From: Ylistrum balloti
Taxonomy: Eukaryota
DNA length: 64,000 nucleotides
Direction: 5' to 3'
NCBI RefSeq assembly: GCF_031769215.1
Contig: NW_026782269.1
Coordinates: 1 to 64,000 of the forward strand
How positions within the stretch are numbered: position 1 is the first letter of the stretch; every line of letters starts with the position of its first letter. A program made the position numbers and the translations under genes. The notes under the pieces are model-generated. The model was not told the DNA's origin. It made no database searches and saw nothing but the letters and a program-made list of their open reading frames with translations. This document shows positions 709 through 61,800 of the stretch, piece after piece.

Positions 709-1548
709 CCTTGTGAACCATCTGATGTCGAAGTGTCTGACGAGTCCTGATGTATAAGACGCTGACGTGTCCTTGGGTAAATATCTTGTGAACCATCTGA
801 TGTCGAAGTGTCTGACGAGTCCTGATGTATAAGACGCTGACGTGTCCTTGGGTAAATATCTTGGGAACCATCTGATGTTGAAGAGTCTGACGAGTCCTGA
901 TTTATAAGACGCTGACGTGTCCTTGGGTAAATATCGTGGGAACCATCTGATGTTGAAGAGTCTGGCGAGTCCTGATGTAGAAGAGTCTGACGTGTGCTTG
1001 AGTTAAGACCGAGGTAACCAGCTGATGTAGAAGAGTCTGACGTGTGCTTGAGTTAAGACCGAGGTAACCAGCTGATGTAGAAGAGTCTGGCGTGTGCTTG
1101 AGTTAAGACCGAGGTAACCAGCTGATGTAGAAGACGCTGACGTGTCCTTTGGTTAAGACCGAGGTAACCAGCTGATGTAGAAGAGTCTGACGTGTGCTTG
1201 AGTTAAGACCGAGGTAACCAGCTGATGTAGAAGACGCTGACGTGTCCTTTGGTTAAGACCGAGGTAACCAGCTGATGCAGAAGAGTCTGACGTGTCCTTG
1301 GGCAAAGTCCGAGGCAACCGACTGATGTAGAAGAGTCTGACGTGTCCTTGTGTAAAAACTGAGGTAACCGACTGATGTAGAAGAGTCAGTCGTGTCCATG
1401 GGTAAAATCCGAGGTAACCGACTGATATAGAAGAGTCTGACGTGTCCTTGGGTAAAGTCCTAGGTAACCGACTGATGTAGAAGAGTCTGACGTGTGCTTG
1501 AGTAAGGACCAAGGTAACCAGCTGATGTTGAAAAATTCTGTCGTGCCC
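709..1548. repeat. Minisatellite: 75-bp units grading into 50-bp units
   Basis: Period 75 at 711/786/861; period 50 from ~971 (GCTGATGTAGAAGAGTCTGACGTGTGCTTGAGTTAAGACCGAGGTAACCA). Confidence 0.95.
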
Positions 1549-6800: not shown

Positions 6801-8184
6801 AGATATTTCAAAAGGACACGTGCCCCCACCAACAACAGCAACAACGTAGGTTATCACCAAATTTTAGGCGCGTTTGCCAGTTGTCACATAGCATTATTCT
6901 TAAACGTGCTACAGCAAATTTTGTCTGGTTACATTAATTATTAAACTTATCTTTATGAATAAAAAAATAAATTTACATCACTTATAGTGAAGTTATAAAG
7001 AGTGTGTAGTGTTCCCGTAAAGCAAAGTCAGCTTCATCATTATATCTCTGTCCTGGATATGCCAGTGTTTGGGTATTTTTGCTTGTGAACATGTAAGCAG
7101 TGTAGTATTAATATTAGTATTCTCTTCAGTAATAAGATATATTTTTAGATAAAATTTCGACTCTTTTTTATTTATTTTTTTTTAAATTTGAACACTTGTG
7201 AAATATATTTGCTATTACTGAAGACACTTTAGAAATATCCTCTGTCATTATAATTACATAAATACATCTGTCTTTGGTGGTAAATTAAAGCACATAAATT
7301 ATATTTTCTAGAATAAGTACTTGTGTCATAACAAAAACTATATATCAAAGTATTTTTTCCGTTATGTAACGTTTGGGAACCTTCCTACAAGGACAGGCAG
7401 TGTGTTTTTATCAGGGCTGATAACAGAAGGGGGGAGATAGATGTTAAACATATTAACACATCAGGATATACAATATGAACTCGGAGAAATGCCATCAATT
7501 TTTTATCGTTTTAAAACTGACTTTAGAAACAGCTACTGCAGTTCTGGAATTTTGTAACCCCACTAATCACTCTTTACCGACACTTTGTCGCTGACTAAAA
7601 AAATGTCGCAAGTCTTATTTCAAAAATGATTGATTTGTTTTCAAGTGAATATGATGATTTATCAACCGGAGAAAGTGATATTTCAGTGTTTTAGCGCAAC
7701 AGTCGGAAATCTGTTTAACCTCCACTGGAGCCGCCATGACATCCTAATTCTGGTAATTGCGACATGTGTTGCTAAAAAAATTTAGTTAACAAATCATTTT
7801 ACTTAATTTGTTTTATTTTTTTTATCTCAAAAAGAACATCAATTGACATAGTTGTTTAAATGCTTGCACATTGTCTTGCATGCTGAAGCATTTTACAAAA
7901 TCTGCTGGGATGCTATTTTCAGACTTGTTAACGTTATCATTACTGGTTTGTAGTGGCCGATTGGTTTTGCCTCTATTACTGATCTGTAAGTAATTGTGAG
8001 GGATTTTGGAGAGTTAATCCTGTTGTGCTCTGTATTATGTTTCGGATCAGTCTGTAAATATTGATAAGATACAGTTTTATGACGTTTTCTTCCCTCCACA
8101 CCAAAAAGCTAACACAATTTAAATCACAAAATTTATATGGTTTACATTGAAATCTTTCTTGCAAAATCACATGATTTCATGCTT

Positions 8185-9025
8185 GTGCTTCCCGGTCATT
8201 ACCTTGTCAGGTCAAAAGAAATGACTTTTGCTTCCCGGTAGTTAGCTTGTCAGGTCACAAGTAGTGGCTTGTGCTTCAGGTCGTTACCTTGTCATGTCAC
8301 AAGAAATGACTTTTGTTTCCTGGTCGTTACCTCGTTATGTCGCAATTAATGACTTGTGCTTCCCGGTCGTTACCTTGTCAGGTCACAAGAAATGACTTTT
8401 CTTTCCTGGTCGTTACCTCGTTATGTCACAATTAGTGGTTTGTGCTTCCGGTCGTTACATTGTCAGGTCACAAGAAACTACTTATGTTTCCCGGTCGTTA
8501 CCTCGTTATGTCACAATTAGTGGTTTGTGCTTCCGGTCGTTACCTTGTCAGGTCACAAGAAATGACTTTTGTTTCCCGGTCGTTAACTTGTCAGGTCACA
8601 AGAAATGACTTTTTTTTCCCGGTCGTTACCTTGTCAGTCACAAGAAATGACTTTTGTTTCCCGGTCGTTAACTTGTCAGGTCACAAGAAATGACTTTTGT
8701 TTCCCGGTCGTTACCTTGTCAGTCACAAGAAATGACTTTTGTTTCCCGGTCGTTACCTTGTCAGTCACAAGAGATGACTTTTGTTTCCCGGTCGTTACCT
8801 CGTTATGTCACAATTAGTGGCTTGTGCTTCCTGGTCGTTACCTTGTCAGGTCACTAGAAATGACTTTTGTTTCCCGGTCGTTACCTCGTTGTGTCACAAT
8901 AAGTGGCTTGTGCTTCTGGTCGTCACCTTGTCAGGTCACTAGAAATGACTTTTGTTTCCCGGTCGTTACCTCGTTGTGTCACAATAAGTGGCTTGTGCTT
9001 CTGGTCGTCACCTTGTCAGGTCACA
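8185..9025. repeat. 42-43-bp minisatellite with two monomer types
   Basis: GTCACAAGAAATGACTTTTGTTTCCCGGTCGTTACC and GTCACAATTAGTGGTTTGTGCTTCCGGTCGTTACC variants. Confidence 0.95.
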
Positions 9026-11197
9026 TTTGTATCTTATTTGAAAGAGCTCATTTGCATGGCTTCATTCTGTTTGAAGACTGTCTCCAAATATATCCTACAA
9101 ATAATACAAATTCTCGCGGAACTTCAGGAGTTATCAGCTAAACATTGTTAACATCGGAATTCTTCCATTGTCAAATGATTGCCTCCGGCGGTATCTAAAC
9201 TTATTCTCCTAGCAATTCAACACCATAAACACGATACATATTCGATAATCAGTATAAATGTCACAGAACTACCATAAAGATTGTCAAAAAAGAACAAAAT
9301 AAGCCAATCTATATTGTATATACAGAGGTTATGTCAGCTGACGTGGATAGGAGATGAACCCCGTAGCAATTTAATAACTTTCCCCATAAGTGCTTCCAAA
9401 TGATTGTTCTGTGGATTTCCTACCACAGCATCACACGTATTTTGACACATAATGAATGCTCAATTCTTCTCCGATTCATTTCTTTCCGATTCCGATTCGA
9501 AGCACAAAAATGGTTGATAACTCTATCTGATCACGCCTGTTTTGTCTCACTAGACTGCTTTGTATCAGAATAAGAAAACAACTTTGTTAAAAGGACAATA
9601 GGATTCAAGCAGGTTTCTCTCCTATACCGTTCGTATTTTCTCCCTTGAAGAATAAAACGTGACTTCAACATCTAAACAGCTATTTCCCTCTTCGACAAAG
9701 TCTCCCGGGTATAATGTCGTGTCATTATTTTAACAACCAACATCATTCACAGTTTTTGATTTCCAGACCGAAAGATGATATAAGTACATTGAAATTCCAA
9801 ACATAATAACATATTCTATGGAGGCTTAATCAGGATTAAAAACGACATTTTCCAAACACGTGCACAATGACACTTTTAATTGAGAAAATTGGCTTACACA
9901 CTGTATAAGCAGCATTGACAAGAGGATTTACTTCTCAAAGGAGGCACTGATGGAAATAAAGCAGAGCTCCGTCACGACAATCACCCTCACGCATCATTTC
10001 CTGCTGTTTCGGTCATGACAACTGCTCAATTTCTACACATCGAATACAAAGAACCGAGTCTTCAAAAATGTATAGAATATCCGACGAGATAGATAAGAAC
10101 AAATTTTAAAAATAAAATCCATGTCAAAAGTGAAATGGTGGTGATGTCGGTTGATCATATCTTTGAGTTTGGTGATAGATATATTCCAATATGCTTGTAC
10201 CATTTTCACGCCCGTACAAATAAAATGTTCACATTTATTGTCCTAATGGGTTTGTTCCTTTATTGGGGTAAATAAATTGAGTTTATCGGAACATATAACA
10301 TAAAGCTTGCAAAGTCTATCGATCTCACCGCTAGTTATGTCTCCGATACTTTTCTTTGATTCGTTTATCCCTTGGAACTTAAAACCATAAAGACATTCTA
10401 CAGTATCCATCTGCTATATCTCGGTATTTTCGTAATAAACAACATAACCATAAAGGTGCATAATAAACATAAATGAAATATATTACATTTCTTTTTCTTT
10501 TTTAATGCAACTATGATGCTTACATACCCTTATGGTACCATATGTCTTCGTGACTCATTAGCTTGAGACAAAATTTCATTTAATCAGGATTGTCAGAAAG
10601 AGGGGTGTGTCTTCATGACTCGTTCGATGTAGGCACTTCAGTAGCTCTGCATTTTCGTGCAACCATTTGATGAAAAGTATTATTTATAATTTGAGACGAT
10701 ATTGGTTTCATATCACAGGACCTATGACATGTACTGAAAACTGCTATGATAGTGTTAGAACTTGAAACGAAAGTGCACGTTCTTAGCAGTTAGCTAAACA
10801 AATGACCAAAACACCCACGAAGATACAATCGTATCATCAGACTTCAAATTACAGCTTTGGAGATGGAGATGTGACCTTTCTGTTGGCACAAGGCTGGGAA
10901 CAGATGAGATGTAATACACTTATGTTTCACACCTTATATCGAGCAGGATATCAATTACTAGATTAACTTGACATATGCAAAACCCTTACATAAAAGTTAT
11001 TGCTATTTATAAAATGTTATTGACGTATTTATAAATATCGTCGTCATTTAATTTCCTGCTTGCGAAGAACTCCAGGAGGATATTTATGTTTCCTTATTTG
11101 TTTGATAAACACAATAAATCTTTAAAACAAATGTGATAGGTGAACTTATGATATATCCTCCAGTTATTACTTATAATATGATGTTATCCCAATCTAC

Positions 11198-12590
11198 TAA
11201 AATACCACCCCAGAACAACTGATACTTCCACGTGTCTGGTAAAATACCACCCCAGAACAACTGATACTACCACGTGTCTGGTAAAATACCATACACAGAA
11301 CAACTGACACTTCCACGTGTCTGGTAAAATACCACCCCAGAACAACTGATACTACCACGTGTCTGGTAAAATACCATACACAGAACAACTGATACTTCCA
11401 CGTGTCTGGTAAAATACCACCCCAGAACAACTGATACTTCCACGTGTCTGGTAAAATACCACCCCAGAACAACTGATACTACCACGTGTCTGGTAAAATA
11501 CCATACACAGAACAACTGACACTTCCACGTGTCTGGTACCACCCCAGAACAACTGATACTACCACGTGTCTGGTAAAATACCATACACAGAACAACTGAT
11601 ACTTCCACGTGTCTGGTAAAATACCACCCCAGAACAACTGATACTTCCACGTGTCTGGTAAAATACCCCAGAACAACTGATACTACCACGTGTCTGGTAA
11701 AATACCATACACAGAACAACTGACACTTCCACGTGTCTGGTAAAATACCACCCCAGAACAACTGATACTACCACGTGTCTGGTAAAATACCATACACAGA
11801 ACAACTGATACTTCCACGTGTCTGGTAAAATACCACCCCAGAACAACTGATACTACCACGTGTCTGGTAAAATACCATACACAGAACAACTGATACTTCC
11901 ACGTGTCTGGTAAAATACCACCCCAGAACAACTGATACTTCCACGTGTCTGGTAAAATACCACCCCAGAACAACTGATACTACCACGTGTCTGGTAAAAT
12001 ACCACCCCAGAACAACTGATACTTCCACGTGTCTGGTAAAATACCACCCCAGAACAACTGATACTACCACTGGTAAAATACCACCCCAGAACAACTGATA
12101 CTTCTACGTGTCTGGTAAAATACCACCCCAGAAAACTGATACTACCACCACCCCAGAACAACTGATACTTCCACGTACCACGTGCCTGGTAAAATACCAC
12201 CCCAGAACAACTGATACTTCCACGTGTCTGGTAAAATACCACCCCAGAACAACTGATACTACCACGTGTCTGGTAAAATACCACCCCAGAACAACTGATA
12301 CTTCTACGTGTCTGGTAAAATACCACCCCAGAACCACTGATACTACCACGTGTCTGGTAAAATACCACCCCAGAACAACTGATACTTCTACGTGTCTGGT
12401 AAAATACCACCCCAGAACAACTGATACTACCACGTGCCTGGTAAAATACCACCCCAGAACAACTGATACTTCCACGTGTCTGGTAAAATACCACCCCAGA
12501 ACAACTGATACTACCACGTGCCTGGTAAAATACCATACCTAGAACAACTGATACTACCACGTGTCTGGTAAAATACCATGCCAAAACTGA
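11198..12590. repeat. 42/43-bp minisatellite, ~33 copies
   Basis: TAAAATACCACCCCAGAACAACTGATACTTCCACGTGTCTGG repeated, with internal deletions. Confidence 0.97.
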
Positions 12591-14169
12591 TTCCACCACA
12601 TCGGTAGCAAAAGTGATAGGTAAAAAATTCTATATGACAATAGTAGCTGAATATTGGTAACTTTTGATCAACATCAGACATGGCACATGTATATATATAA
12701 CATTATTGCTTTATAAGCTTGTATATGTATGGATGGAACTTGCGAGCATTACACTTCATAACTGAGGTTAGGACAACATTGGCCTTACACGGTATCAGAA
12801 ACAGAATGGACACGAAACTTTTATACCTTAATACCTTCTCTTTGTTGTTGGTCTATGACATGGTACTTTTAACAATTTTATTGACACCTCTGGATAGGTT
12901 TAACCCCTTAACTGACAATATTGTGTCAGGTTTTCATATGTAACTTCCTATAAGAGAAGCTCCACTGTTGAATGAAGTCGTCGCCCAGTTATTAAAAATG
13001 TCTTGAAGTCTGAGTCGTCTAGTTGTTTGATTAGCCTGCAGTCTGTAATTTAAAAAAAAAAAGTTTGATTTATTTTACTGTAGGATTACTACAGTTATCA
13101 TCAGTCCATGCTGGAAGTGAATGGATGATATAAAAATGCTTAAGTACTTGTATTTTTTTAAGGAATTGAAAGTCAACAAACTAATGTTTTCTCAAAAAAT
13201 TATTTTTTGAAAAAAAAAAAAATACTTTGGATAATTACGTCAGTGTTTTGCCTCGAGTAGTGATATTATTCGATTTCGAGCTTATTAAAACCAACATGCA
13301 AGTTTTTGGGCCAGGCCTCGTTATTTATGAGCTCGTCACATCTGGTGTGTCATTAATGATATATGTGGAGGTGTTGATGGGTAGCTCCATTATTACTATA
13401 ACGTCATCAGTAAAATGTCATTAGCGGGGTTCTTAATTTCTATAAAAACAAACCTTTATGGCTCCTAGAAAGACGCAGATGGGGCTAATTTGGAAAGGAC
13501 ATATTTTTGTAATTTTGCCCACGTCCTAATTTAATCTTTATTGTGTGTTATTGGCAGATCACAGTAAACTCCTCAGAATGTAACTTAAAGAAACCAAAAG
13601 TCACCTATGGCCTGTGACCTATTTTATTATCCTTGTCGTGGGTGTGAGCCGATATGCACATCTTAACCCAACCCTTGTTCAAAAACCTGTAACAAAACAT
13701 TGATCAAATCCCCTTCAATTAAGTCTGTTAGATGTTTTGAACTCATATAAAGCTAGGTTTTTCAAATATAAAAAGTTCCGGAATTTTAACGAGGAAAAAA
13801 AATCATGAAAATTTCAACAAAGTCAAATTTTGGAAAACTGTTTGACAAACTTACAGTTGCTGTTCACTTAAAATATTTACACATTTATTTGCCCACTTAT
13901 ATGCATTTAAAAGTACCAAAAAGTTCATCGAATCCCAGGACTGGTAAAATTCTTCCATGGACAGATTTTCTTGTGCTGGCAGAATCAGGAATATAATTCA
14001 AATTTTATCAGGGTGTTTTTCTTTTCATAATAGAACATAAACAAGAGGGCGTGGCTATCAAATACATGTGTTAAGACACAGACAAAGGTTCTGTTTAATA
14101 TGAATTTATAATCAAACACAATTTCTGGTAATGATTGTTGCCATACTTCAGACATACAATGATAATAAC

Positions 14170-21715: not shown

Positions 21716-23654
21716 AAATTTTACACCGTACAATACATTACTTCTCTTCAATACTTTAAGTTACATGTTTCAACTCCCTTTTAACGTTTAATACTCTGAT
21801 TGCCTTCTGTATACCATTACATTCCGTAATCAATTATATATCCTGTTTGAACTAGTCAAGGTTACGTTCACATCAACTGACAGTTGAACGCTCAGATGAT
21901 ACATCAACAATACTGTTTTGCTTTCCTTTGTCACCTCTCGCACCCACTGTGCTGGGCTAGATCGATTTACAAAAACAGTATACAACGTGAAGGAAGCCTA
22001 CTGTGAAAGGACGTACAAACGACCTGTAAACAAAACCATTATCATAACTTAAAACCAGTAAAACGACAGTAAAATACAAGCTGTGGAAAGTTTTATAGGG
22101 AATTACTCATCTTTCATATCATTGACGACACATTTCGTGTAAATTTAAGTCAGTCAAAAACAACAACGAAAATACCACCAAGTCTACAGATTCTTTATTC
22201 GAACTCAAATTAGATTAATCGATGGCAACACATAAAAAAGACTCGCATGGAAACCTCTGGAAACGTATAAGGAGAATATCACCAGGTGTTCCGGAAGAGT
22301 CAGCGCCTCCTGCTTTATTTACGACAACCCTAATGTAAAGTCATGTTCTCAAAATGAGAATAAGGATAATCACCACCTGCCCTTGATGCCCATCTTCGGC
22401 GTCAATGATCATCAGTGACAGTGACACTAGAAAAGTCCGGAACTTGAAAACTGTATGCGTTTACCTTGAAATTTTGATGAGAACACTGCGTGCCATGAAG
22501 CTTCCTTGTAACTTAAGTGCTGAATTCTTTCACGATACCGTATTTCTTTTGAAGACAGACGTCGACAAAGCTGAAAACAATTATATGTGTGACGCTAGAC
22601 CATGACCTTAACCAGACATAGTAAGACATTAACCAATTTTGCGCCCAAATGAGTGTCTGATGGTGAAAAATGGCGTATCTTGGAAAATTCAATTTCATGA
22701 GTGTTTGTCTTATTATATTAGGACGAGAAATACTTTTCTTACATTTATGTTCAGCAAGTGCGACTGGAGCACGTCCCACCTCATATGGACTAATGTTCGT
22801 TGGAATCGACGTTTACAAGACTTTACTCTCGGTCCTAAACTCAAGACTTAATATTCGTGGTCCGTGACACACGCAATACTTATTCAAAAGTAAACTCGAT
22901 ACTCCCGTATGGTATTACATAACAATTCTAATTAAGATATGAACAATTTACTATCAAACTCTACTTCGTTATAAATTTTCTTTATTAAAAACCTTTTTTG
23001 TAGGAAATTGTATGAGATTTTGGAGGAGGGAGCACCCTTCGCCCTTTCTCTTAACCCATTTCAAGATCTGGGTAATTTCACTTCAACGCCTGTTATATCA
23101 AATTTGCACCGTCTTTCTATGAGTCAGCTACTCTATACTGGCTGCTTACTTCGATCTTTTTTCTACCAGCAAGGATATTTATGACTTCGCTCTACAAGTA
23201 TGGCGTTTTCAACTTGTCTATCATTTTTAAGAAATGGATCTTGAAAAATATCCTCGCGTGATCCTCACTACATAAGAAATACAATGGTATGTTTGAGTAT
23301 TATTGTGATAGACAGAATTCTACGTACGAAATACAATTCTCCATCCCTGAATTAGATTTTTCAGCACGCACGAGTCATAAAAATGTTATCACTGTTTTGT
23401 AATCCTCCTATTCCGCTGTGCTATGCGCACTGATCATTTAAAAAGTGACATGTCGAACGAGAGAGATATGGCGATGACGTCAATATTTATCTGTTGATAA
23501 AAATATGGCGGGATGATTCATTACATAGAAATTGATAAATTCTACCTACTTAAGTTCGTAAAACAAAAGTTACATGTTAGCATGCATTGGAGACACACGA
23601 AACATACTAGTCGTAAGTCATCAGTCAAAAAATAGCTCGTCCAAACCCGTCATT

Positions 23655-24095
23655 CCACAGCCACCAGTCCAATGTCACCAATTCAATGTCACAAATCCAA
23701 TGTCACAAATCCAAAGTCATCAGTCCATTGTCATCAGTCCAAAGCCACCAGTCTAATGTCATAGTCCACAGTCACCAGTCCAATGTCATCAGTCTAAAGC
23801 CACCAGTCAATTGTCACCAGTCTAATGTCATAGTCCAAAGCTGTCAGTCCAATGTCACCAGTCCAAAGCCGCCAGTCCAAAGTTACCAGTCGAATGTCAC
23901 CAGTCTAATGTCATAGTCCAAAGCTGTCAGTCTAATGTCAGCCGTCCAAAGCCGCCAGTCCAAAGTTACCAGTCGAAAGTCACCAGTCTAATGTCATTGT
24001 CCAAAGCCGCCAGTCCAAAGTTACCAGTCGAATGTCACCAGTCCAAATCATCAGTCCAAATCTGTCAGTCCGAGCCCATCAACCCACAGCCACCA
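23655..24095. repeat. Degenerate 13-14-bp subunit satellite
   Basis: ATGTCACCAGTCCA / AAGCCGCCAGTCCA / TGTCATAGTCCA variants. Confidence 0.85.
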
Positions 24096-24405
24096 GTCCA
24101 AATAAAACAAGGTAAGATATTGTGGAACCAATAACAACACCAGTTAAACAAAACTGCGTAGGGCGTACCTTATGATATCCTTGTCCCAGCAAGACTTTAA
24201 TGAAACGTTCCGGTTAACGACACTGCTATCCTCTGTTAGTAGAAGGCTCTCTGTCGTATTTACTTAGATGTTTCAACGGAACGCTTGGCCTAGCGTCAAT
24301 TCAACATAACAGATAATTTATAACCATGGAGAAATATGTCCTGAAGTACTAAGGAATTAAATGAAGCAGAGCAGGAACTATTCAATTTGATGCTGCCCTT
24401 AACTT

Positions 24406-24713
24406 CACTGACGAGTGCTAGAAGGACGAAACCGCTGTATGATGTAGTATCACTGACGAGTGCTAGAAGGACGAAACAGCTGTATGATGTAGCATCACTG
24501 ACGAGTGCTAGAAGGACGAAACCGCTGTATGATGTAGCATCACTGACGAGTGCTAGAAGGACGAAACAGCTGTATGATGTAGCATCACTGACGAGTGCTA
24601 GAAGGACGAAACAGCTGTATGATGTAGCATCACTGACGAGTGCTAGAAGGACGAAACCGCTGTATGATGTAGCATCACTGACGAGTGCTAGAAGGACGAA
24701 ACCGCTGTATGAT
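24406..24713 (+). ncRNA. Tandem array of seven 45-bp minimal hammerhead ribozyme motifs
   Basis: Unit CATCA-CTGACGA-GTGC(TAGAA)GGAC-GAAAC-(A/C)GCT-GTA-TGATG-TAG. It has the CUGANGA and GAAA core, GUA cleavage triplet, stem I CATCA/TGATG, stem II 3 of 4 bp, and stem III AC/GT closing a tetraloop. Units start at 24406, 24451, 24496, 24541, 24586, 24631 and 24676. Confidence 0.88.
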
Positions 24714-25989
24714 ACGGTTTAATTTATAATTATTCTCTCCTGTATCTGGTTCTAAATTTGTATTTTTGTGTTATCTTCGATGTTGCAGGTGCTGCTGATA
24801 CCTTTAGTACACGAGGTTTTACCGTAACCAGCATGCCACGTTTAAATTCATTCAAATAGCGGCACTGTCCACAATGTACATATATACATGACGTTCTTCG
24901 GAAATCATTACCTATATTAGAATTACTAAATTTGTTGAATTATAGTGCTAGTCCTTTTCTATGTAAACTTTTCTTTTGATCACTTTGATTTCCCTCAGTC
25001 GTCTCCTATGTATAAAAAATAAAGCCCATAGCATGAGGTCGAGTTGTATGTTTGCAATTTTAATTCATTATTTGTCTCTGCTGTATCTGATTGCAAACTT
25101 GAATTCAAAGTTGTTATTTACGTATGTATCTTTTGTACAATCTTCGTTTCACTTTTTGTACATTTTGTAAAAGTAAGATCAATGGCCAGGAAGCCGTTGT
25201 TCATTATATGATGTGACAACATGTAGAATACGGACCAGCATTGGGCAGTTATTGTCTAATCGGTGATCTCATCCCAATTATAGCTCTAATACAGCTATAA
25301 ATGATTGAGACATATCCGTCTTATATACCCTTAATAACATAATTAGGGGTTATCGGGATGGTATGTTATAGACAGAACGAATCAATGACCGGAGCCTTAT
25401 CCCAGTCATTTCTTACACACCAATGGACATCGTACGTTACCGATGAGGTATATAGGTTTTTAATCGTCATGAAATGTGATTAAGCAACTTGCAAAGTGTT
25501 TATTTTCTGTGAGACGTTTCAATAAAATCATAATCGCTTGAAGTATCTCCAAAGACCTTCAAAGTCCTTTAAAACTGAGAAATTACAATAAAAAGGTCAT
25601 TTAGAATCGGCATTTCGGCCACCTGGGTCAAGTTTGTAACTGCCAATAAAAATCGTTTCCATATTTCGAAAAAAGTTCTAAAAATTTCACAGAAAAAGGA
25701 ATGGCAAGCACACCCGAGAATTGCCGAACATCAATGTCAGCGAAGCCAAGATGGCGTCGTTAGCATTAACGCCAACAAAATATGCTCCCTTTAAAACGCT
25801 CATTTGTATTTGCGATGTAAAATTTGTGGGGAAAAGTTCAATAAAAAAAGTATTGTTTAATGAAATAGTGTTAAAACATTTAGAATATGCCGACAAGAGA
25901 AATAATCATGATCTAAATTCAAATTCAATAAAACTAATCAATAATATGAAGAAAAAAAGATTTACTGATAGACTCATGAAAAAGCACAA

Positions 25990-32399: not shown

Positions 32400-34225
32400 A
32401 TAATATATATATATCATTGTTTGTATGGACTGCTGGAATAATCGATATTGATTATTGATTTTTCTATTCGATGCTTGACTATATATATATCATTGTTTGT
32501 ATGGACTGCTGGAATAATCGATATTGATTATTGATTTTTCTATTCGATGCTTGACTATATATATATCATTGTTTGTACGGACTACTGGGATAATCGATAT
32601 TGATTTTTCTATTCGATGCTTGACTATATATATATCATTGTTTGTACGGACTACTGGGATAATCGATATTGATTTTTCTATTCGATGCTTGACTATATAT
32701 ATATCATTGTTTGTACGGACTACTGGGATAATCGATATTGATTTTTCTATTCGATGCTTGACTATATATATATCATTGTTTGTATGGACTACTGGGACGA
32801 TCGATATTGATTTTTCAATTCGAAGCTTGACTATATATATATCATTGTTTGTATGGACTGCTGGAATAATCGATATTGATTTGTCTATTCGATGTTTGAC
32901 TATATATATATCATTGTTTGTACGGACTACTGGGATAATCGATATTGATTTTTCTATTCGATGCTTGACTATATATATATCATTGTTTGTACGGACTACT
33001 GGGATAATCGATATTGGTTTTTCTATTCGATGCTTGACTATATATATATCATCGTTTGTATGGACTACTGGAATAATCGATATTGATTTTTCTATTCGAT
33101 GTTTGACTATATATATATCATTGTTTGTATGGACTGCTGGAATAATCGATATTGATTTTTCTATTCGATGCTTGACTATATATATATCATTGTTTGTATG
33201 GACTACTGGAATAATCGATATTGATTTTTCTATTCGATGCTTGACTATATATATATATCATTGTTTGTATGGACTGCTGGAATAATCGATATTGATTTTT
33301 CTATTCGATGCTTGACTATATATATATCATTGTTTGTACGGACTACTGGGATAATCGATATTGATTTTTCTATTCGATGCTTGACTATATATATATCATT
33401 GTTTGTATGGACTACTGGAATAATCGATATTGATTTTTCTATTCGATGCTTGACTATATATATATCATTGTTTGTATGGACTACTGGAATAATCGATATT
33501 GATTTTTCTATTCGATGCTTGACTATATATATATCATTGTTTGTATGGACTACTGGGACGATCGATATTGATTTTTCTATCCGATGCTTGACTATATATA
33601 TATCATTGTTTGTATGGACTGCTGGAATAATCGATATTGATTTTTCTATTCGATGTTTGACTATATATATATCATTGTTTGTACGGACTACTGGGATAAT
33701 CGATATTGATTTTTCTATTCGATGCTTGACTATATATATATCATTGTTTGTACGGACTACTGGGATAATCGATATTGGTTTTTCTATTCGATGCTTGACT
33801 ATATATATATCATTGTTTGTATGGACTGCTGGAATAATCGATATTGATTTTTCTATTCGATGTTTGACTATATATATATCATTGTTTGTATGGACTGCTG
33901 GAATAATCGATATTGATTTTTCTATTCGATGTTTGACTATATATATATCATTGTTTGTACGGACTGCTGGAATAATCGATATTGATTTTTCTATTCGATG
34001 CTTGACTATATATATATCATTGTTTGTACGGACTACTGGGATAATCGATATTGATTTTTCTATTCGATGCTTGACTATATATATATCATTGTTTGTACGG
34101 ACTACTGGGATAATCGATATTGATTTTTCTATTCGATGCTTGACTATATATATATCATTGTTTGTACGGACTACTGGGATAATCGATATTGATTTTTCTA
34201 TCCGATGCTTGACTATTTACATATA
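32400..34225. repeat. 69-bp minisatellite, ~26 copies
   Basis: TATATATATATCATTGTTTGTACGGACTACTGGGATAATCGATATTGATTTTTCTATTCGATGCTTGAC; produces the 23-aa repeat pseudo-ORFs. Confidence 0.98.
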
Positions 34226-41269: not shown

Positions 41270-42060
41270 GTATGATGTATCGTCTCCACTCTCCATTTTC
41301 CTGTCCTATATATCGTCACGGTTAGATGTATGATGGTGTCATCTCCACTCTCCATTTTCCCGTCCTATATATCGTCACGGTATCATCTCCACTCTCCATT
41401 TCCCTGTCCTATATATCGTCACGGTATCGTCTCCACTCTCCATTTCCCTGTCCTATATATCGTCACGGTATCATCATCACTCTCCATTTTCCTGTCCTAT
41501 ATATCGTCACGGTATCGTCTCCACTCTCCATTTTCCTGTCCTATATATCGTCACGGTATCGTCTCCACTCTCCATTTTCCTGTCCTATATATCGTCACGG
41601 TATCGTCTCCACTCTCCATTTTCCTGTCCTATATATCGTCACGGTATCGTCTCCACTCTCCATTTTCCCGTCCTATATATCGTCACGGTATCGTCTCCAC
41701 TCTCCATTTTCCCGTCCTATATATCGTCACGGTATCGTCTCCACTCTCCATTTTCCCGTCCTATATATCGTCATGGTATCGTCTCCACTCTCCATTTTCC
41801 CGTCCTATATATCGTCATGGTATCGTCTCCACTCTCCATTTTCCCGTCCTATATATCGTCATGGTATCGTCTCCACTCTCCATTTTCCCGTCCTATATAT
41901 TATCACAGTTAGATGGTATCATCTCCACTCTCCGTTTCCTGTCCTATATATTGTCACAGTTAGATGGTATCATCTCTACTCTCCGTTTCCTGTCCTATAT
42001 ACAATTAATGGTCCTATTATTTGGGTTGAAGGTTGCTGGTCTGATCTATCACGGTATCAT
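41270..42060. repeat. 44-bp minisatellite, ~17 copies
   Basis: CACGGTATCGTCTCCACTCTCCATTTTCCTGTCCTATATATCGT. Confidence 0.96.
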
Positions 42061-49800: not shown

Positions 49801-52800
49801 AGGCAACCAGCTGTAGCCTAAAATGATGTGTGTTATCAGTTAGGTTTCAGGCAACAAACTGTGGCCTACTAAGTTGATGTGTGTGTTGTTCTATCAGCGA
49901 AGTTTTAGGCAACCAGCTATAGCCTACCAAGTTGATATGTGTTGTGTTTTTTAAAAATAGATTTCAGGCAACCAGATGTAGCCTAAGATGATGTGTGTTG
50001 TTAGCAAGGTTTCAGGCAACCAGCTGTGGCCTACCAAATTCAGACAACCAGATGTAGAAGAAAGTAGAATATACTGTTTGGTGACCTGGCTTCAGGAGTT
50101 GCTTCTCTTCTTTTTTCGATTTACAGTGTACATGTATTTTTTTTTTAAATAGGTTACATTCACCTTAATCCCCTTTCAAGATTACAGAGGTCAGATGTTT
50201 GAAAATCTTCAAACAACTTCTCAATAGAATGAAATGCCTAAAGTACTGATATTTTAACTGTATCATGCTGGCTGTGAAGGGATACAAAGTTGATGCAAAT
50301 GTATGACCTTGACCTGCTTTCATGTCACTGAGGTTTTCCATAACTGCATCCCACATTTTAATTCATTCAAACAATGGCACACTTCAGAATCTACATATCT
50401 ACATAACATTTTTCTAATTATCAGATATATGAAAGTTATGAGATTTACTGAAGTATGGGGCTAGTACACCTCCACATCTAGCTTTAGACATTTCTTATTA
50501 CCACTTTGGATGTTCCTTAATCACCTCATATGTTTAACGTTTAGGCCCTTAGCATCACTGACAAGGCCTAGGAGAATAAAACAGCTGTAGCATGCAGTTT
50601 AATTTATTGATTGGCTGTACTATATCTAACTCTAAATTTGTATTGCCTGGTAAATGGTGTTATTCACTTGTGTGTCGTTTGTACAATCTGTATTGATATA
50701 TGACTTCTAAAAAAAGCATAAATGACCTTTACATAGGTTTTTGTTCCACTTAGGAAACAAAGTCAACATGTAATTCAACCATAATCATTATTAACAGTGT
50801 TAAAAGGCTTTGTGGAGCTCATTCTAGACATGAACTGATAGAGGCACTACATACAACACTGAACAGGATCTGTTTGCAAATATGTTTCTCGGAACAAAAT
50901 ATCAAAATTACAATTTGTATATGGTGCTCTTCAGTTTCAAACCCACAAAGGAATAAGCTTGTTTGGATAGCTGTCTTCACCAGAAGTCATTTTGGAAACT
51001 TGCTGTGAACACACACTGTAGAGCAATAATTTGTTCATGGTAGCAACATAACTTTGCAAATGTCAATTGCTCTACTATCTGACGTCAATACACAAAACGT
51101 GTGCATTTCAGAAAAGCTCTGTGGGTTTATATCTCCTACCACATATTCTCATTTATCTTAATAATGTGTGATACTAATTAGGTCTTATACATTCTGCAGA
51201 AAAAAGTTAAAAAAATATATTTCCTATTCCCAATGGCTTTCCCTTCATGCCAGTGTCAGGCAAAAGTAACAGATAAGCAGAAGAAAGAGAACTAAACAAG
51301 CATTGTCATTTTGATTGTCCACACGTTACTCTAGTTAAACGCTGCTGTTTGTTAGCTATAAATACCTTGTCAAGAGAGAATTTCTCTCTGGATTAATCAG
51401 AAAAGCAATATTCTAGTGAGTCAGGAGTTCTGGATCTGATTTCTAGCCGGGATGTAGAAAAATAATGGCTGTTTCATTGGTGCTCAGTATTGTTCATGTA
51501 AGAGAAAAAACTGACAAAAACACTCAACCTTGTTTTGTCTGTTCACTTAACAAGTTTTGTTGCTTGTTGCATATTCTTCCAATTTTTCAGTGTGAAGTAT
51601 TTTGTTCAAGTGAGATATTTCATAGATCTCTCAACAGATTTATTTCATATTTATACCATAGTATCACAACATTAAGGTTTACAGCTTCTAAGATTTTGAT
51701 AGTCATCAGTCAAAGTTAGAGTCAAAAGTCACATGATCACTTTACTTTTATCAAGGGACAGTACTTTTACATTTGTGATAGTGAAGAGTCATGTGAATGA
51801 AGGCTGTTCTTGTAAATGTGATTACCATTTCTTCATGAAGGATTTTCAATTTTCTAAATACAAATAAGCTAAAACAATTAGCTATACCAGGTACATATAT
51901 TCAAAATGGTATTTGCAGATACCTTTGATAGTGTTTATTTCTATTTCAGGTAAAAATCGAGAAAATTTCAAGGATTTTGTAAATACTCTAGCAACTATCA
52001 AAGTAGATGAGGTAAGTACCTTTTTCATATTTCAGTGAATCTTGTAGTATATTTTACTAGGTATTGCGTCTATCAGGGGCCTGTCAGTAGAGGATGTAAC
52101 ACTTGTGTCTATCAGGGGCCTGTCAGTAGAGGATGTAACATTTGTGTCTATCAGGGGCCTGTCAGTAGAGAATGTAACATTTGTGTCTATCAGGGGCCTG
52201 TCAGTAGAGAATGTAACATTTGTGTCTATCAGGGGCCTGTCAGTAGAGAATGTAACATTTGTGTCTATCAGGGGCCTGTCAGTAGAGGATGTAACACTTG
52301 TGTCTATCAGGGGCCTGTCAGTAGAGAATGTAACATTTGTGTCTATCAGGGGCCTGTCAGTAGAGAATGTAACATTTGTGTCTATCAGGGGCCTGTCAGT
52401 ATAGGATGTAACACTTGTGTCTATCAGGGGCCTGTCAGTAGAGTCTATCAGGGGCCTGTCAGTAGAGAATGTAACATTTGTGTCTATCAGGGGCCTGTCA
52501 GTATAGGATGTAACACTTGTGTCTATCAGGGGCCTATCAGTATAGGATATAACCTCTGCCTTTGTTGGTATCAGAGTAACTTGTTAGTATACATTTGACT
52601 CTTTATGATTGTGATTGATATTTCACATCTAACCTGAATTTTCAACAATAAGCCCACGCTGATAATAAGTCCACTTACTGCAGATCAGTCATGTTATTCT
52701 ACTTATGTCCTGTAATAAGGCAACACCCTGATTTTAAGAGTTAATATGTTGATCACCTGGCTTCATTCTTGTCATGCCACAGATAAATGGCATTCATAGC

Positions 52801-58800: not shown

Positions 58801-61800
58801 GTGATTGATGAACTGCATTTGATTGCCCAGAATCAGCCTGCCATAGTTTGTGTTTTGATTTAATATCAATTTTAATGAAAACATTTGACCGTAAATAGGT
58901 GAATTATCACAACATTAGAGCTTGTGATTATGGTCAGCTTTAGATGACCGTGTTTAAACATCAGGTAATTTAATGTCTGTTTTCTTTCTTTTTTCCCTGT
59001 TTCCTGTTCCATCTGAAAGGACTTCACAAATGTAAGTACTGTCTCTTTACCCCCCAACTGTTGATGGATTACCTCCCCAAGTAACAAACATTAGCTGTCA
59101 CTATAACGTCTTAATCTTAACGTGTACTGAAACAACAAAGTTATATGTTTAAAGAGTTATTTCTGAAAGTTTTGGTTATACCTAGTTGTGTAAACCCTTT
59201 CTAGGAACTAGAATTAAAGTCTATACTTCCATGGTGCCTGCTTCACCTCCTCTTTGATGTAGAGTAATGTCTTAAGATAAGTGAAGTGCTGCTTACGCCT
59301 TCCTAGGACTGTCCAAGATTATAACACGTATGGTTTGAGATTGTTACAGCGAAAATGGTACTGAAAATAAAATAAGACATAAAGAGATTGGTGTCTTTTT
59401 ACTGGATACTAGTGTGAATACTCTAAATTTAATCTCCTTCTTTTATTTCTAATATTTTCTCTTGATTCTCTTTTTCATGTCCTACCTCTCCAGGGCGTAA
59501 GTATAACACAGAATGTGATGCTGGCTAATGCCTGTAGTTGGTAAACAGGAGATTTATATGATAAGTCATTGCTTAGTAATGTTTTCTTCAGAGGTAATGT
59601 ATTACTAGTTCACTGTACAAAAAATATTTATTGTATCTGTTAAAAATTTTGATGATATATTTCTCATATTCTGACGGTGTTACCACATACTGTCAATATA
59701 TATATCTTTGTGGTGAACATATTTTAGCACTTTCAACACTCAAAATATTGTAATAAGATATTATTGCTTTCATTGCAGTTTCTGTCTGTTGAATATATAA
59801 CAATTATTGCGGATGTATAAATTTATCGTTGTACCTATTTACCATAAGTTGATACTATTTTATTGTTTACAGTCTCTATATAAGGAGTCTTAATTGATAT
59901 AAACAATTAGATATAGTAAATATAAATACTTTTCATGGTAAAAAATTACTGCCTGTTTTTGTGTGGATGATTTTTTAAAGGAATATTTATCATGTTATTG
60001 TTTCCCTGTCTTGTTGCGGCTGCTGCACTGGTTGGATCCTTCCTCATTAGTATGTAAGTACAGCTGGATGTGTGGTGATTTCATATAGGTGATAATTCTG
60101 TGTTTATGTTCTTGATTTTGATATCATGAATTATCTGTATACTGACCAACTGACTGAACGTTGTCATGTTAATGATGACCTGTACAAATGTTGTCATGTT
60201 GATGATGACCTATACAAATGTTGTCATGTTCATGATGACCTGTACAAATGTTGTCATGTTCATGATGACCTATACAAATGTTGTCATGTTCATGATGACC
60301 TGTACAAATGTTGTCATGTTAATGATGACCTATACAAATGTTGTCATGTTAATGATGACCTGTACAAATGTTGTCATGTTAATGATGACCTATACGAATG
60401 TTGTCATGTTAATGATGACCTATACAAATGTTGTCATGTTAATGATGACCTATACAAATGTTGTCATGTTAATGATGACCTATACGAATGTTGTCATGTT
60501 AATGATGACCTATACAAATGTTGTCATGTTAATGATGACCTATACAAATGTTGTCATGTTAATGATGACCTATACGAATGTTGTCATGTTAATGATGACC
60601 TTTACGAATGTTGTCATGTTAATGATGACCTGTACGAATGTTGTCAAGTTAATGATGACCTATACAAATGTTGTCATGTTCATGATGACCTGTACAAATG
60701 TTGTCATGTTCATGATGACGTATACAAATGTTGTCATGTTCATGATGACCTATACGAATGTTGTCATGTTCATGATTGTCATGTTCATGTTAATGATGAC
60801 CTATACAAATGTTGTCATGTTAATGATGACCTATACAAATGTTGTCATGTTAATGATGACCTATACAAATGTTGTCATGTTAATGATGACCTGTACAAAT
60901 GTTGTCATGTTAATGATGACCTGACCTGTACAAATGTTGTCATGTTAATGATGACCTATACAAATGTTGTCATGTTAATGATGACCTATACGAATGTTGT
61001 CATGTTAATGATGACCTGTACGAATGTTGTCATGTTAATGATGACCTATACAAATGTTGTCATGTTAATGATGACCTGTACAAATGTTGTCATGTTAATG
61101 ATGAGGTATACAAATGTTGTCATGTTCATGATGACCTGTACAAATCACAAGAAACCATCGGAATCATCAAACATTTCATTGCCATTTTCTGGAATTTGGA
61201 AATTCAAAGTTAAGTCTTAAAACATAAAATAGTTCTGAATTTTATTTACAAAAATGTGATGATTATATCGTAGAAGTGATTAAAAGACACTGCTGATTTT
61301 TTAGGGCTATGATATTTGATCACCATGCGTCAGTGACTGTTAACCGATGTGTGTAATTGTGTTGACAGACAGCTGTACATTGGGCTGCTAAACATGGTAA
61401 CCCTGAGGTTCTGAAGCTTGTGTTGGGCAAGACAAACATTGACATCAACAAGAGAACGGTAAATATCTCCTTAATCTTCTGTCCTTTTCTTACACTGGTT
61501 GGTTGACAGGTTTTCCATCTGTTCTGGCAACACATTCTTTCACAGATATTCTTATTTTATATCTCTTTCTTTGGTGACCTCACAAAGCTATGATGTTACC
61601 ATAGAAACAATTGAAACCTTCAGCCAATCACAGTTCTTTTAGGTCATATTACACATGTGAAATTACAATTATGGAATAAGTCTTATTATACTTATAACAG
61701 GGTAGTTACATGATAACTTTATTTTGTAATAACTAGATAATGTATAGTATTTTACAACTGACTTCTGTATTGAATTTTGTCTCCACACTGATAATACATT

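What the first reader, a model, noticed from the sequence alone, without database searches (positions are those of the whole stretch)
24406..24713. A 45-bp 'satellite' whose monomer is nothing but a hammerhead ribozyme
Seen: seven head-to-tail copies of CATCA CTGACGA GTGC-TAGAA-GGAC GAAAC (A/C)GCT GTA TGATG TAG, with an intact catalytic core in all seven and only TAG as spacer. Established: minimal type I hammerheads with a 1-2 bp stem III capped by a palindrome occur in metazoan Penelope LTRs and non-LTR retrozymes, work as dimers, and normally sit in monomers of roughly 150-400 nt. Inference: the tandem itself could rescue activity in cis. TGATG-TAG-CATCA folds as a stem I hairpin, and the palindrome ACAGCTGT (copies 2, 4, 5) of one unit can pair with the next to give an up-to-8-bp stem III (type III topology). 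A transcript would then be cut after each GUA into 45-nt monomers that might be circularised, an extremely small retrozyme-like RNA. Caveat: stem II has a G-G mismatch in all copies.
Basis: partly seen in the sequence, partly recalled or inferred. Interest (0 to 1): 0.85.

Follow-up and report, generated by a model that had tools for sequence, protein, structure and literature searches.

The report
Hammerhead-ribozyme minisatellite inside a decayed retrozyme
Seven back-to-back copies of a 45-base self-cutting RNA motif are really there, but they are a local DNA repeat expansion inside an old, broken copy of a 400-base mobile element found thousands of times in this bivalve genome, and this copy carries a mutation predicted to spoil the ribozyme fold.

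Summary
Window 24400-24714 is seven in-register 45-bp units, each with a complete hammerhead core.

It is not a free-standing satellite. The array sits at the ribozyme position of a 5'-truncated copy of a ~399-bp non-coding, retrozyme-like element. A full but decayed copy of the same element follows directly (24785-25144).

The family is large: at least 11,630 ribozyme cores and at least 3,606 candidate parent copies in this 648-Mb genome. Arrays of 2-48 units are common.

Two adjacent consensus units fold, as minimum-energy structure, into a type III hammerhead and pass Rfam's threshold.

This window's units share a rare stem II C-to-G change. They score below threshold, and their predicted best fold is not the ribozyme.

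Array growth looks DNA-driven:
- units with dead cores are multiplied within arrays;
- in 22 of 22 arrays the units are far more alike than the age of their flanks allows;
- this window alone holds about 15 other 30-53-bp minisatellites.

No RNA data were available, so cleavage, 45-nt RNAs and circles remain untested.

This scan has already reported the same family on other windows of this genome. I found no paper describing a ribozyme-only 45-bp repeat.

The parts
24395..24399 (+). Last few bases of the parent element's 5' part. The copy is 5'-truncated just upstream of the ribozyme.
   Evidence: Only 'gccct' plus the diverged stem I strand match the parent consensus. Further upstream there is no credible similarity (local score 32).
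24400..24714 (+). Seven head-to-tail 45-bp hammerhead units. Each unit is: 3-nt spacer, stem I 5' strand, CUGACGA, stem II hairpin, GAA, stem III palindrome, GUA cleavage triplet, stem I 3' strand.
   Evidence: All units carry C>G at unit position 18 (stem II). Units 1, 3, 6 and 7 carry A>C at position 34 (palindrome).
24566..24618 (+). Best cross-unit (type III register) hammerhead: palindrome of unit 4, stem I hairpin across the unit junction, core and stem II of unit 5, palindrome of unit 5. Predicted cleavage is after 24574.
   Evidence: Rfam Hammerhead_3 scores 39.4 bits at 24567-24617 (cut-off 48.5). This is the only junction with a perfect 8-bp stem III. Its MFE (-14.6 kcal/mol) is not the ribozyme fold, which lies 2.3 kcal/mol higher.
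24437..24439 (+). First of seven GUA triplets. Predicted cleavage sites are after 24439, 24484, 24529, 24574, 24619, 24664 and 24709.
   Evidence: Positions computed. Cleavage itself was not tested.
24715..24784 (+). 3' part of the truncated parent copy, diverged and with an internal deletion of about 10 nt.
   Evidence: 80.8% identical to parent consensus 302-386.
24785..25144 (+). Adjacent near full-length copy of the parent element. The two copies form a partial tandem of the kind described for Penelope-like elements.
   Evidence: Aligns to parent consensus 7-398 at 80.8% identity.
25029..25054 (+). Dead remnant of the downstream copy's single hammerhead. Gaps of 15, 1 and 4 nt remove CUGACGA, part of stem II and the GAAA box.
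   Evidence: Alignment; sequence.

Best explanation
The array is an internal minisatellite of a decayed mobile element, not an independent ribozyme satellite. The host is a ~399-bp non-coding element with 39.6% GC. Its single type I hammerhead lies at consensus positions 268-312. It is dispersed in thousands of copies and often sits as a 5'-truncated copy abutting a full copy. That layout fits the non-LTR retrozyme / Penelope-like non-autonomous kind. In many copies the 45-bp ribozyme module is repeated head to tail, with the same boundaries in the arrays whose flanks could be aligned. This argues that the first duplication arose once in a master copy and was inherited by transposition (inferred). 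After insertion, arrays grow, shrink and homogenise as DNA, by unequal exchange or replication slippage, whether or not the units can still cut (shown by sequence patterns). In this window a founder unit that had already gained a rare stem II C>G change was multiplied to seven units long after the element inserted. The units keep the catalytic core, but stem II is broken and the new G allows a competing helix. This copy is therefore most likely catalytically crippled and has no role. At family level, adjacent consensus units do form a proper type III hammerhead. A transcript through an intact array could probably cut itself every 45 nt in vitro (inferred, not tested).
For: Embedding in a parent element. 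Flanks are conserved between loci. The parent consensus is 399 bp. The genome holds at least 3,606 candidate copies. Upstream 5'-truncated copies abut full copies in roughly 8 of 30 loci. Arrays with alignable flanks start at consensus 267/268 and end at 312/313.

Abundance. There are 11,630 cores within 2 mismatches and none for the reversed control pattern. The dominant variant has a perfect stem II. The window's exact variant occurs only 33 times, 7 of them here. Arrays of 2-48 units mostly have 45-bp spacing.

DNA-level growth.
- Lethal core changes are multiplied within single arrays: A6>C in 27 of 48 units, A14>G in 13 of 17, G5>A and G8>A each in 12 of 21, and A15.1>U in 9 of 9.
- A 42-bp unit with two core changes and a shortened loop 2 is repeated about 45 times.
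- In 22 of 22 arrays, unit-to-unit identity (mean 89.7%) exceeds the square of flank identity (70%); Wilcoxon p = 4.8e-7. For this window the figures are 96.2% against 64%.
- As a control, in solo copies the ribozyme (90.6%) and the flanks (88.4%) have decayed alike.
- Across 303 units, the catalytic core (7.2% divergence) is no better kept than stems or loop 2 (6-8%).
- The window holds about 15 other arrays of 30-53-bp period.

Folding. The consensus junction has the type III hammerhead as MFE and centroid (-17.5 kcal/mol, z = -3.06). In the window junctions the MFE is a different fold, and the ribozyme fold is 2.3-3.6 kcal/mol worse. Rfam: the window scores below the cut-off; consensus units score above it.
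Against: No RNA data exist, so a biological role for transcripts cannot be excluded. The unit boundaries coincide exactly with the whole ribozyme domain plus 3 nt. An unguided DNA duplication would achieve that only by luck, or through selection on a master copy. Flank identity to a consensus is an imperfect clock if subfamilies differ. The window's flank estimate rests on only 60 aligned bases. A tree of flanks is star-like and cannot show that array-bearing copies share one origin: 11 changes against 13 in shuffles. A stem II with two intact pairs next to the core can still support some cleavage in minimal hammerheads (general knowledge), so 'crippled' is a prediction from thermodynamics only.
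Confidence: 0.78

Rival explanations
1. The array is a working mini-retrozyme: it is transcribed, each GUA is cut by a hammerhead formed across two neighbouring units, and the 45-nt products are circularised and copied back into DNA by rolling-circle reverse transcription. This would create and spread the arrays.
For: Consensus neighbours form a canonical type III hammerhead as MFE and pass Rfam's cut-off. The unit equals the ribozyme domain plus a 3-nt loop. The family is very abundant. Larger retrozymes do make circular RNAs in mussel, coral and axolotl (PMC7229834).
Against: Most arrays sampled lie at the ribozyme position of the 399-bp parent, with the parent's 3' part after them and often its 5' part before them. 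In the sample they are not free insertions. Units with dead cores are amplified to dozens of copies. Arrays are much more homogeneous than the age of their flanks allows. This window's units carry a fold-disrupting mutation yet were amplified seven-fold. No RNA evidence is available.
Confidence: 0.06
2. Arrays are born during reverse transcription. After copying the compact ribozyme domain, the reverse transcriptase repeatedly jumps from the 5' base of stem I back to its 3' base, which lies next to it in space. Each new insertion would then carry a variable number of identical units. DNA-level turnover would act only afterwards.
For: The unit boundaries sit exactly at the base of stem I, with no microhomology at the junction. 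Boundaries are identical across loci. Some 5'-truncated copies begin inside an array. Array-bearing and solo copies are intermixed in a star-like tree.
Against: One ancestral duplication followed by inheritance explains the identical boundaries equally well. Arrays are younger than their flanks in 22 of 22 cases, so most of the present copy number arose after insertion. Some arrays show repeating blocks of several units, for example a spacing of 37 bp recurring every 11 units, which is typical of unequal exchange. There is no direct evidence of template jumping.
Confidence: 0.12
3. The array is kept by the host for a function, such as cutting a host transcript or acting as a regulatory RNA.
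For: All seven units keep the catalytic core.
Against: This is one of many similar arrays that decay neutrally. Its host element is broken. The shared stem II change disfavours the active fold. No coding exon was recognised nearby in a limited ORF and Pfam check of six ORFs.
Confidence: 0.03

Closest known systems
Metazoan non-LTR retrozymes (Cervera & de la Pena 2020, PMC7229834; Li, Clavereau & Pollet 2026, bioRxiv 10.64898/2026.07.22.740005)
   Same: Type I hammerhead with a very short stem III capped by a palindrome. Non-coding, low GC (parent 39.6%). Head-to-tail or partial-tandem genomic copies in thousands. The ribozyme is expected to act through pairing of two copies. The 399-bp parent matches the mussel monomer size of 350-390 bp.
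   Different: Described monomers are 150-450 bp with one ribozyme each. Here the ribozyme module alone (45 bp) is reiterated 2-48 times inside the element. Expression and circles are shown for the published families but not here.
Minimal hammerheads of Penelope-like elements (Cervera & de la Pena 2014, PMC4209133)
   Same: Same minimalist architecture and dimer logic. The partial-tandem insertion layout matches pseudo-LTR organisation. A tandem element in this genome with long open frames and a GIY-YIG match carries a motif of the same design at about L081:1561-1602.
   Different: The parent element has no reverse transcriptase or endonuclease ORF. The ribozyme of the one such element I could fetch has a different sequence, so the autonomous partner is not identified.
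Double hammerhead of newt satellite 2 and avocado sunblotch viroid transcripts (Forster et al. 1988, as cited in PMC4209133)
   Same: An unstable stem III is rescued by pairing the stem III regions of two ribozyme copies.
   Different: There the two copies lie a few hundred nucleotides apart or on two molecules. Here they are adjacent, so the double form is in effect a single-molecule type III hammerhead that shares each stem III strand with its neighbour.
Tandem-repeat cores inside non-autonomous elements of bivalves, such as the DTC84 MITE of Donax trunculus (PMC3879986, abstract) and satellite/TE networks (PMC5139131, abstract)
   Same: A short internal segment of a dispersed non-autonomous element is expanded into arrays of variable length.
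   Different: The expanded unit here is a complete ribozyme, and the element is of retrozyme rather than MITE type.

Membership tests
Hammerhead ribozyme (Rfam clan CL00010: RF00163 type I, RF00008 type III) | Conserved core: C3 U4 G5 A6 N7 G8 A9, G12 A13 A14, the A15.1-U16.1 pair, and H17 not G | tested here: met
   All seven units carry CUGACGA, GAAA, the A...U closing pair and GUA.
Hammerhead ribozyme (Rfam clan CL00010: RF00163 type I, RF00008 type III) | Three helices around the core, with stem II intact | tested here: inconclusive
   Stem I has 5 bp. Stem III has 2 bp within a unit, or 6-8 bp across two units. Stem II has a G-G mismatch at its third pair in all seven units. The MFE of every junction is a non-ribozyme fold. 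The family consensus has all three helices.
Hammerhead ribozyme (Rfam clan CL00010: RF00163 type I, RF00008 type III) | Score at or above Rfam's gathering threshold | tested here: not met
   In the window, Hammerhead_3 scores 39.4 and 32.3 bits (cut-off 48.5) and Hammerhead_1 scores 22.9-26.3 bits (cut-off 34). Consensus-type units elsewhere pass, at 50.5 and 35 bits. Five of 66 scored genome candidates pass.
Hammerhead ribozyme (Rfam clan CL00010: RF00163 type I, RF00008 type III) | Site-specific self-cleavage | not testable with these tools
   This needs in vitro transcription or RNA end mapping. No RNA run was available.
Non-LTR retrozyme | Non-coding tandem or partial-tandem repeat of 150-450 bp with one type I hammerhead and low GC | tested here: met
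   This is met by the 399-bp parent (39.6% GC) and by the window's two-copy layout. It is not met by the 45-bp array taken alone.
Non-LTR retrozyme | Expressed as linear and circular monomer RNAs | not testable with these tools
   The one run found is of unrecorded kind and kept as contigs.
Penelope-like element | ORF with reverse transcriptase and GIY-YIG endonuclease between pseudo-LTRs | tested here: not met
   The parent is 399 bp and has no such ORF. GIY-YIG matches lie elsewhere in the genome.
Minisatellite (DNA-level tandem repeat) | Head-to-tail units of tens of bp, with copy number and sequence turning over locally and independently of any product | tested here: met
   Variants private to an array, including lethal ones, are multiplied within it. 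Units are younger than flanks in 22 of 22 arrays. Many other 30-53-bp arrays lie in the same window.

The most novel reading that the evidence does not exclude
At family level, the tandem ribozyme module is an adaptation of the mobile element. Two or more adjacent units give a built-in, single-molecule type III hammerhead, which removes the need for a second distant copy. Transcripts through intact arrays would then be cut every 45 nt in vivo, releasing the smallest natural hammerhead RNAs known, possibly as 45-nt circles.
Probability: 0.12. Interest if true: 0.75.

Novelty: new variant of a known kind. Interest (0 to 1): 0.35.

Why it matters
Animal hammerhead repeats are described with monomers of 150-450 bp, where the ribozymes must find each other over a distance or between molecules. 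A family in which the ribozyme alone is the repeat unit, so that neighbours complete each other, is a compact natural layout. I could not find it in the searched literature. It offers a simple test bed for cis-dimer cleavage. It also gives a clear example of a mobile element's functional RNA module turning into ordinary satellite DNA. This particular locus adds little: it is a mutated, decayed member of a family the scan has already met several times.

Tried and rejected
RNA evidence. The run search returned a single run of unrecorded kind, kept as contigs, and no RNA run. Laying it confirmed both flanks of the array, with single-letter differences, and showed a very high summed depth for the unit words. 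It cannot show transcripts, ends or array length.

Other organisms. An exact scan of metagenome contigs for the unit junction found nothing. A scan for the core with its stem II found three hammerheads with different stems I and III, which I take to be unrelated. No paper in the library holds the core or junction strings. Searches for hammerhead with scallop, bivalve satellite or minisatellite gave nothing relevant.

Autonomous partner. GIY-YIG matches exist. The one tandem element I could fetch has its own, different minimal hammerhead and no similarity to the parent.

One origin of array-bearing copies. The tree of flanks is star-like, with no significant clustering. This is unresolved.

Signature of past cleavage. 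The 5' ends of truncated copies do not pile up at the cleavage site (starts at consensus 276, 282, 284, 291, 301, 314, 326 and 360). The sample is too small to conclude anything.

Selection on the core in genomic copies. No excess conservation was found, even though my detection was biased towards intact cores. One compensatory stem I change (C-G to A-U) was seen, in only two arrays.

Coding reading. The 111-codon open frame across the array follows from the 45-bp period. Pfam gave nothing nearby apart from weak matches inside a 69-bp tandem repeat.

Full report
**1. What is in the sequence**

Window 24400-24714 consists of seven in-register 45-bp units.
- TRF reports period 45, 6.9 copies and 98% matches at 24405-24713.
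- Each unit reads, in order: 3-nt spacer, stem I 5' strand, CUGACGA, a stem II hairpin, GAA, an 8-nt stem III palindrome, the GUA triplet, stem I 3' strand.
- The 25-nt core string occurs seven times exactly, against 0.08 expected from shuffles.
- The units differ from the family consensus by C>G at unit position 18 (stem II) in all seven. Units 1, 3, 6 and 7 also have A>C at position 34 (palindrome). There are small changes at the two outer ends.

**2. Is it a hammerhead?**

Rfam finds nothing in the window at gathering thresholds. With permissive thresholds:
- The best matches are Hammerhead_3 (type III), at 39.4 and 32.3 bits against a cut-off of 48.5. They lie in a register that spans two units: the palindromes of two neighbours form stem III, and the sequence across the unit junction forms the stem I hairpin.
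- Hammerhead_1 scores 22.9-26.3 bits against a cut-off of 34.

At another locus of the same family the units have the consensus stem II. There the same cross-unit register scores 50.5 bits and the type I register 35 bits, both above threshold. A genome-wide run of the type III model gave 45 matches among only 66 scored candidates, five above threshold, and none in 14 control genomes.

Folding agrees with this:
- The 53-nt consensus junction has the type III hammerhead as both MFE and centroid (-17.5 kcal/mol, z = -3.06).
- In all six junctions of this window the MFE is a different structure. The new G lets the stem II 5' strand pair with the stem I region. The ribozyme-competent fold is 2.3-3.6 kcal/mol less stable.
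- Only the junction of units 4 and 5 has a perfect 8-bp stem III.

**3. The array is part of a larger element**

The core occurs 11,630 times in the 648.5-Mb genome within two mismatches, and the reversed control pattern occurs not at all. The dominant form has a perfect stem II. The window's exact variant occurs 33 times, seven of them here.

In sampled loci the motif occurs singly or in arrays of 2-48 units, mostly spaced 45 bp apart, with 44-, 43- and 42-bp derivatives. The sequences on either side are conserved between loci.

Aligning 23 copies gives a 399-bp consensus:
- a 267-nt 5' part;
- the 45-nt ribozyme at positions 268-312;
- an 87-nt 3' part;
- 39.6% GC.

A search with one solo copy found at least 3,606 candidates. 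In roughly 8 of 30 loci a 5'-truncated copy abuts a full one head to tail. That is the partial-tandem layout described for Penelope-like elements and their non-autonomous relatives (PMC11167929, PMC8557442).

Arrays with alignable flanks begin right after consensus position 267 and end right before 313, so those arrays share one register.

In the window:
- The array-bearing copy is truncated a few bases upstream of the first unit.
- Its 3' part (24715-24784) is 80.8% identical to consensus.
- A near full-length copy follows directly (24785-25144; 80.8% identical to consensus 7-398).
- That copy's own ribozyme has lost its 5' core box, part of stem II and the GAAA box through deletions.

**4. 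How the arrays grow**

Four observations point to DNA-level turnover that does not depend on catalysis.
- Lethal changes are multiplied within single arrays: A6>C in 27 of 48 units, A14>G in 13 of 17, G5>A and G8>A each in 12 of 21, G5>A in 9 of 16, A14>C in 11 of 24, and A15.1>U in 9 of 9. A 42-bp derivative with two core changes and a shortened loop 2 is repeated about 45 times.
- In 22 of 22 arrays with alignable flanks, the units are more alike (mean 89.7%) than they could be if they had diverged since the element inserted. That expectation is the square of flank identity, mean 70% (Wilcoxon p = 4.8e-7). For this window the figures are 96.2% against 64%, though on only 60 flank bases. As a control, in solo copies the ribozyme (90.6%) and the flanks (88.4%) have decayed alike.
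- Over 303 units, the catalytic core (7.2% divergence) is no better kept than stems or loop 2 (6-8%). Only 138 units have an intact core, and 89 are intact throughout.
- This 64-kb window alone holds about 15 other tandem arrays with periods of 30-53 bp, so minisatellite formation in this size range is commonplace here.

Some arrays also show repeating blocks of several units.

The shared register, with no microhomology at the junction, suggests that the first duplication happened once in a master copy and spread by transposition. A tree of flanks is star-like and cannot confirm this. A structure-guided origin during reverse transcription remains possible for the first step.

**5. What could not be shown**

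- No RNA run was available. The one run found is of unrecorded kind and kept as contigs. It confirms both flanks of the array with single-letter differences.
- Truncated copies do not start preferentially at the cleavage site, but there are too few to judge.
- The autonomous partner is not identified. A tandem element on another contig, with long open frames and a GIY-YIG match, carries a minimal hammerhead of the same design but a different sequence.
I did not verify it.

**6. Comparison with what is known**

- Published animal hammerhead repeats have monomers of 150-450 bp. The mussel monomer is 350-390 bp. They make linear and circular RNAs (PMC7229834).
- Minimal hammerheads of Penelope-like elements are thought to act as dimers and cut poorly in vitro (PMC4209133).
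- The 399-bp parent fits this kind by sequence features.
- The ribozyme-only 45-bp repeat was not found in the searched literature.
- Expansion of an internal segment of a non-autonomous element into arrays is well known in bivalves (PMC3879986, PMC5139131).

**7. Verdict**

- The replicon-like reading is not supported.
- The locus is an ordinary, decayed member of an unusual family.
- This scan has already reported the family on other windows of the same genome. My independent tests reach the same conclusion as those notes.

Noticed in passing
window 710-1532: A 75/50-bp minisatellite whose 50-bp unit aligns collinearly, though weakly, with the 45-bp hammerhead unit. It shares CTGACG.GT.C, then AA.CAGCTG, then ATGTAG. 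The alignment score is 23, against 12.1 +/- 2.3 for shuffles (4 of 2000 reach it) and 8-16 for eight other minisatellites of the window. It may be an old, dead derivative of the same module.
   Followed up: partly
window 23650-24060: A 14-bp tandem repeat (about 29 copies, 71% matches, with 69- and 83-bp higher-order periods) lies 340 bp upstream of the array. No link to the hammerhead element was seen.
   Followed up: no
window, whole: The window is unusually rich in minisatellites: about 15 separate arrays with periods of 30-53 bp in 64 kb. Examples are 8182-9025 (43 bp), 11198-12578 (42 bp), 41335-41900 (44 bp), 52064-52553 (39 bp) and 60160-61145 (30 bp).
   Followed up: no
window 32453-34224: A 69-bp tandem repeat of 25.6 copies at 95% identity. 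Its open frames give weak Pfam matches to Msl2-3_C, which look like a repeat artefact.
   Followed up: partly
L081:1561-1602 (G000:C422, tandem element of about 5.36-kb period): A tandem element with long open frames (485 and 687+ codons) and a GIY-YIG match carries, about 370 nt upstream of the first frame, a minimal hammerhead-like motif. It has a 4-bp stem I, CUGAAGA, a 3-bp stem II, GAAAC, a stem III palindrome ACUAGU and cleavage triplet GUA. The design matches the satellite's ribozyme but the sequence differs.
   Followed up: partly
L078:2237-4110: An array of about 45 copies of a 42-bp derivative of the hammerhead unit, with A6>G, G12>A and a shortened loop 2. It is a clearly dead unit that went on multiplying.
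   Followed up: yes
L084 (metagenome contig Ga0136604_1000105), about 10220-12694: Four hammerhead-like motifs lie within 2.5 kb of an unrelated metagenome contig. They share the same stem II and loop 2 as the bivalve unit but have different stems I and III. I take this to be an unrelated hammerhead family.
   Followed up: no
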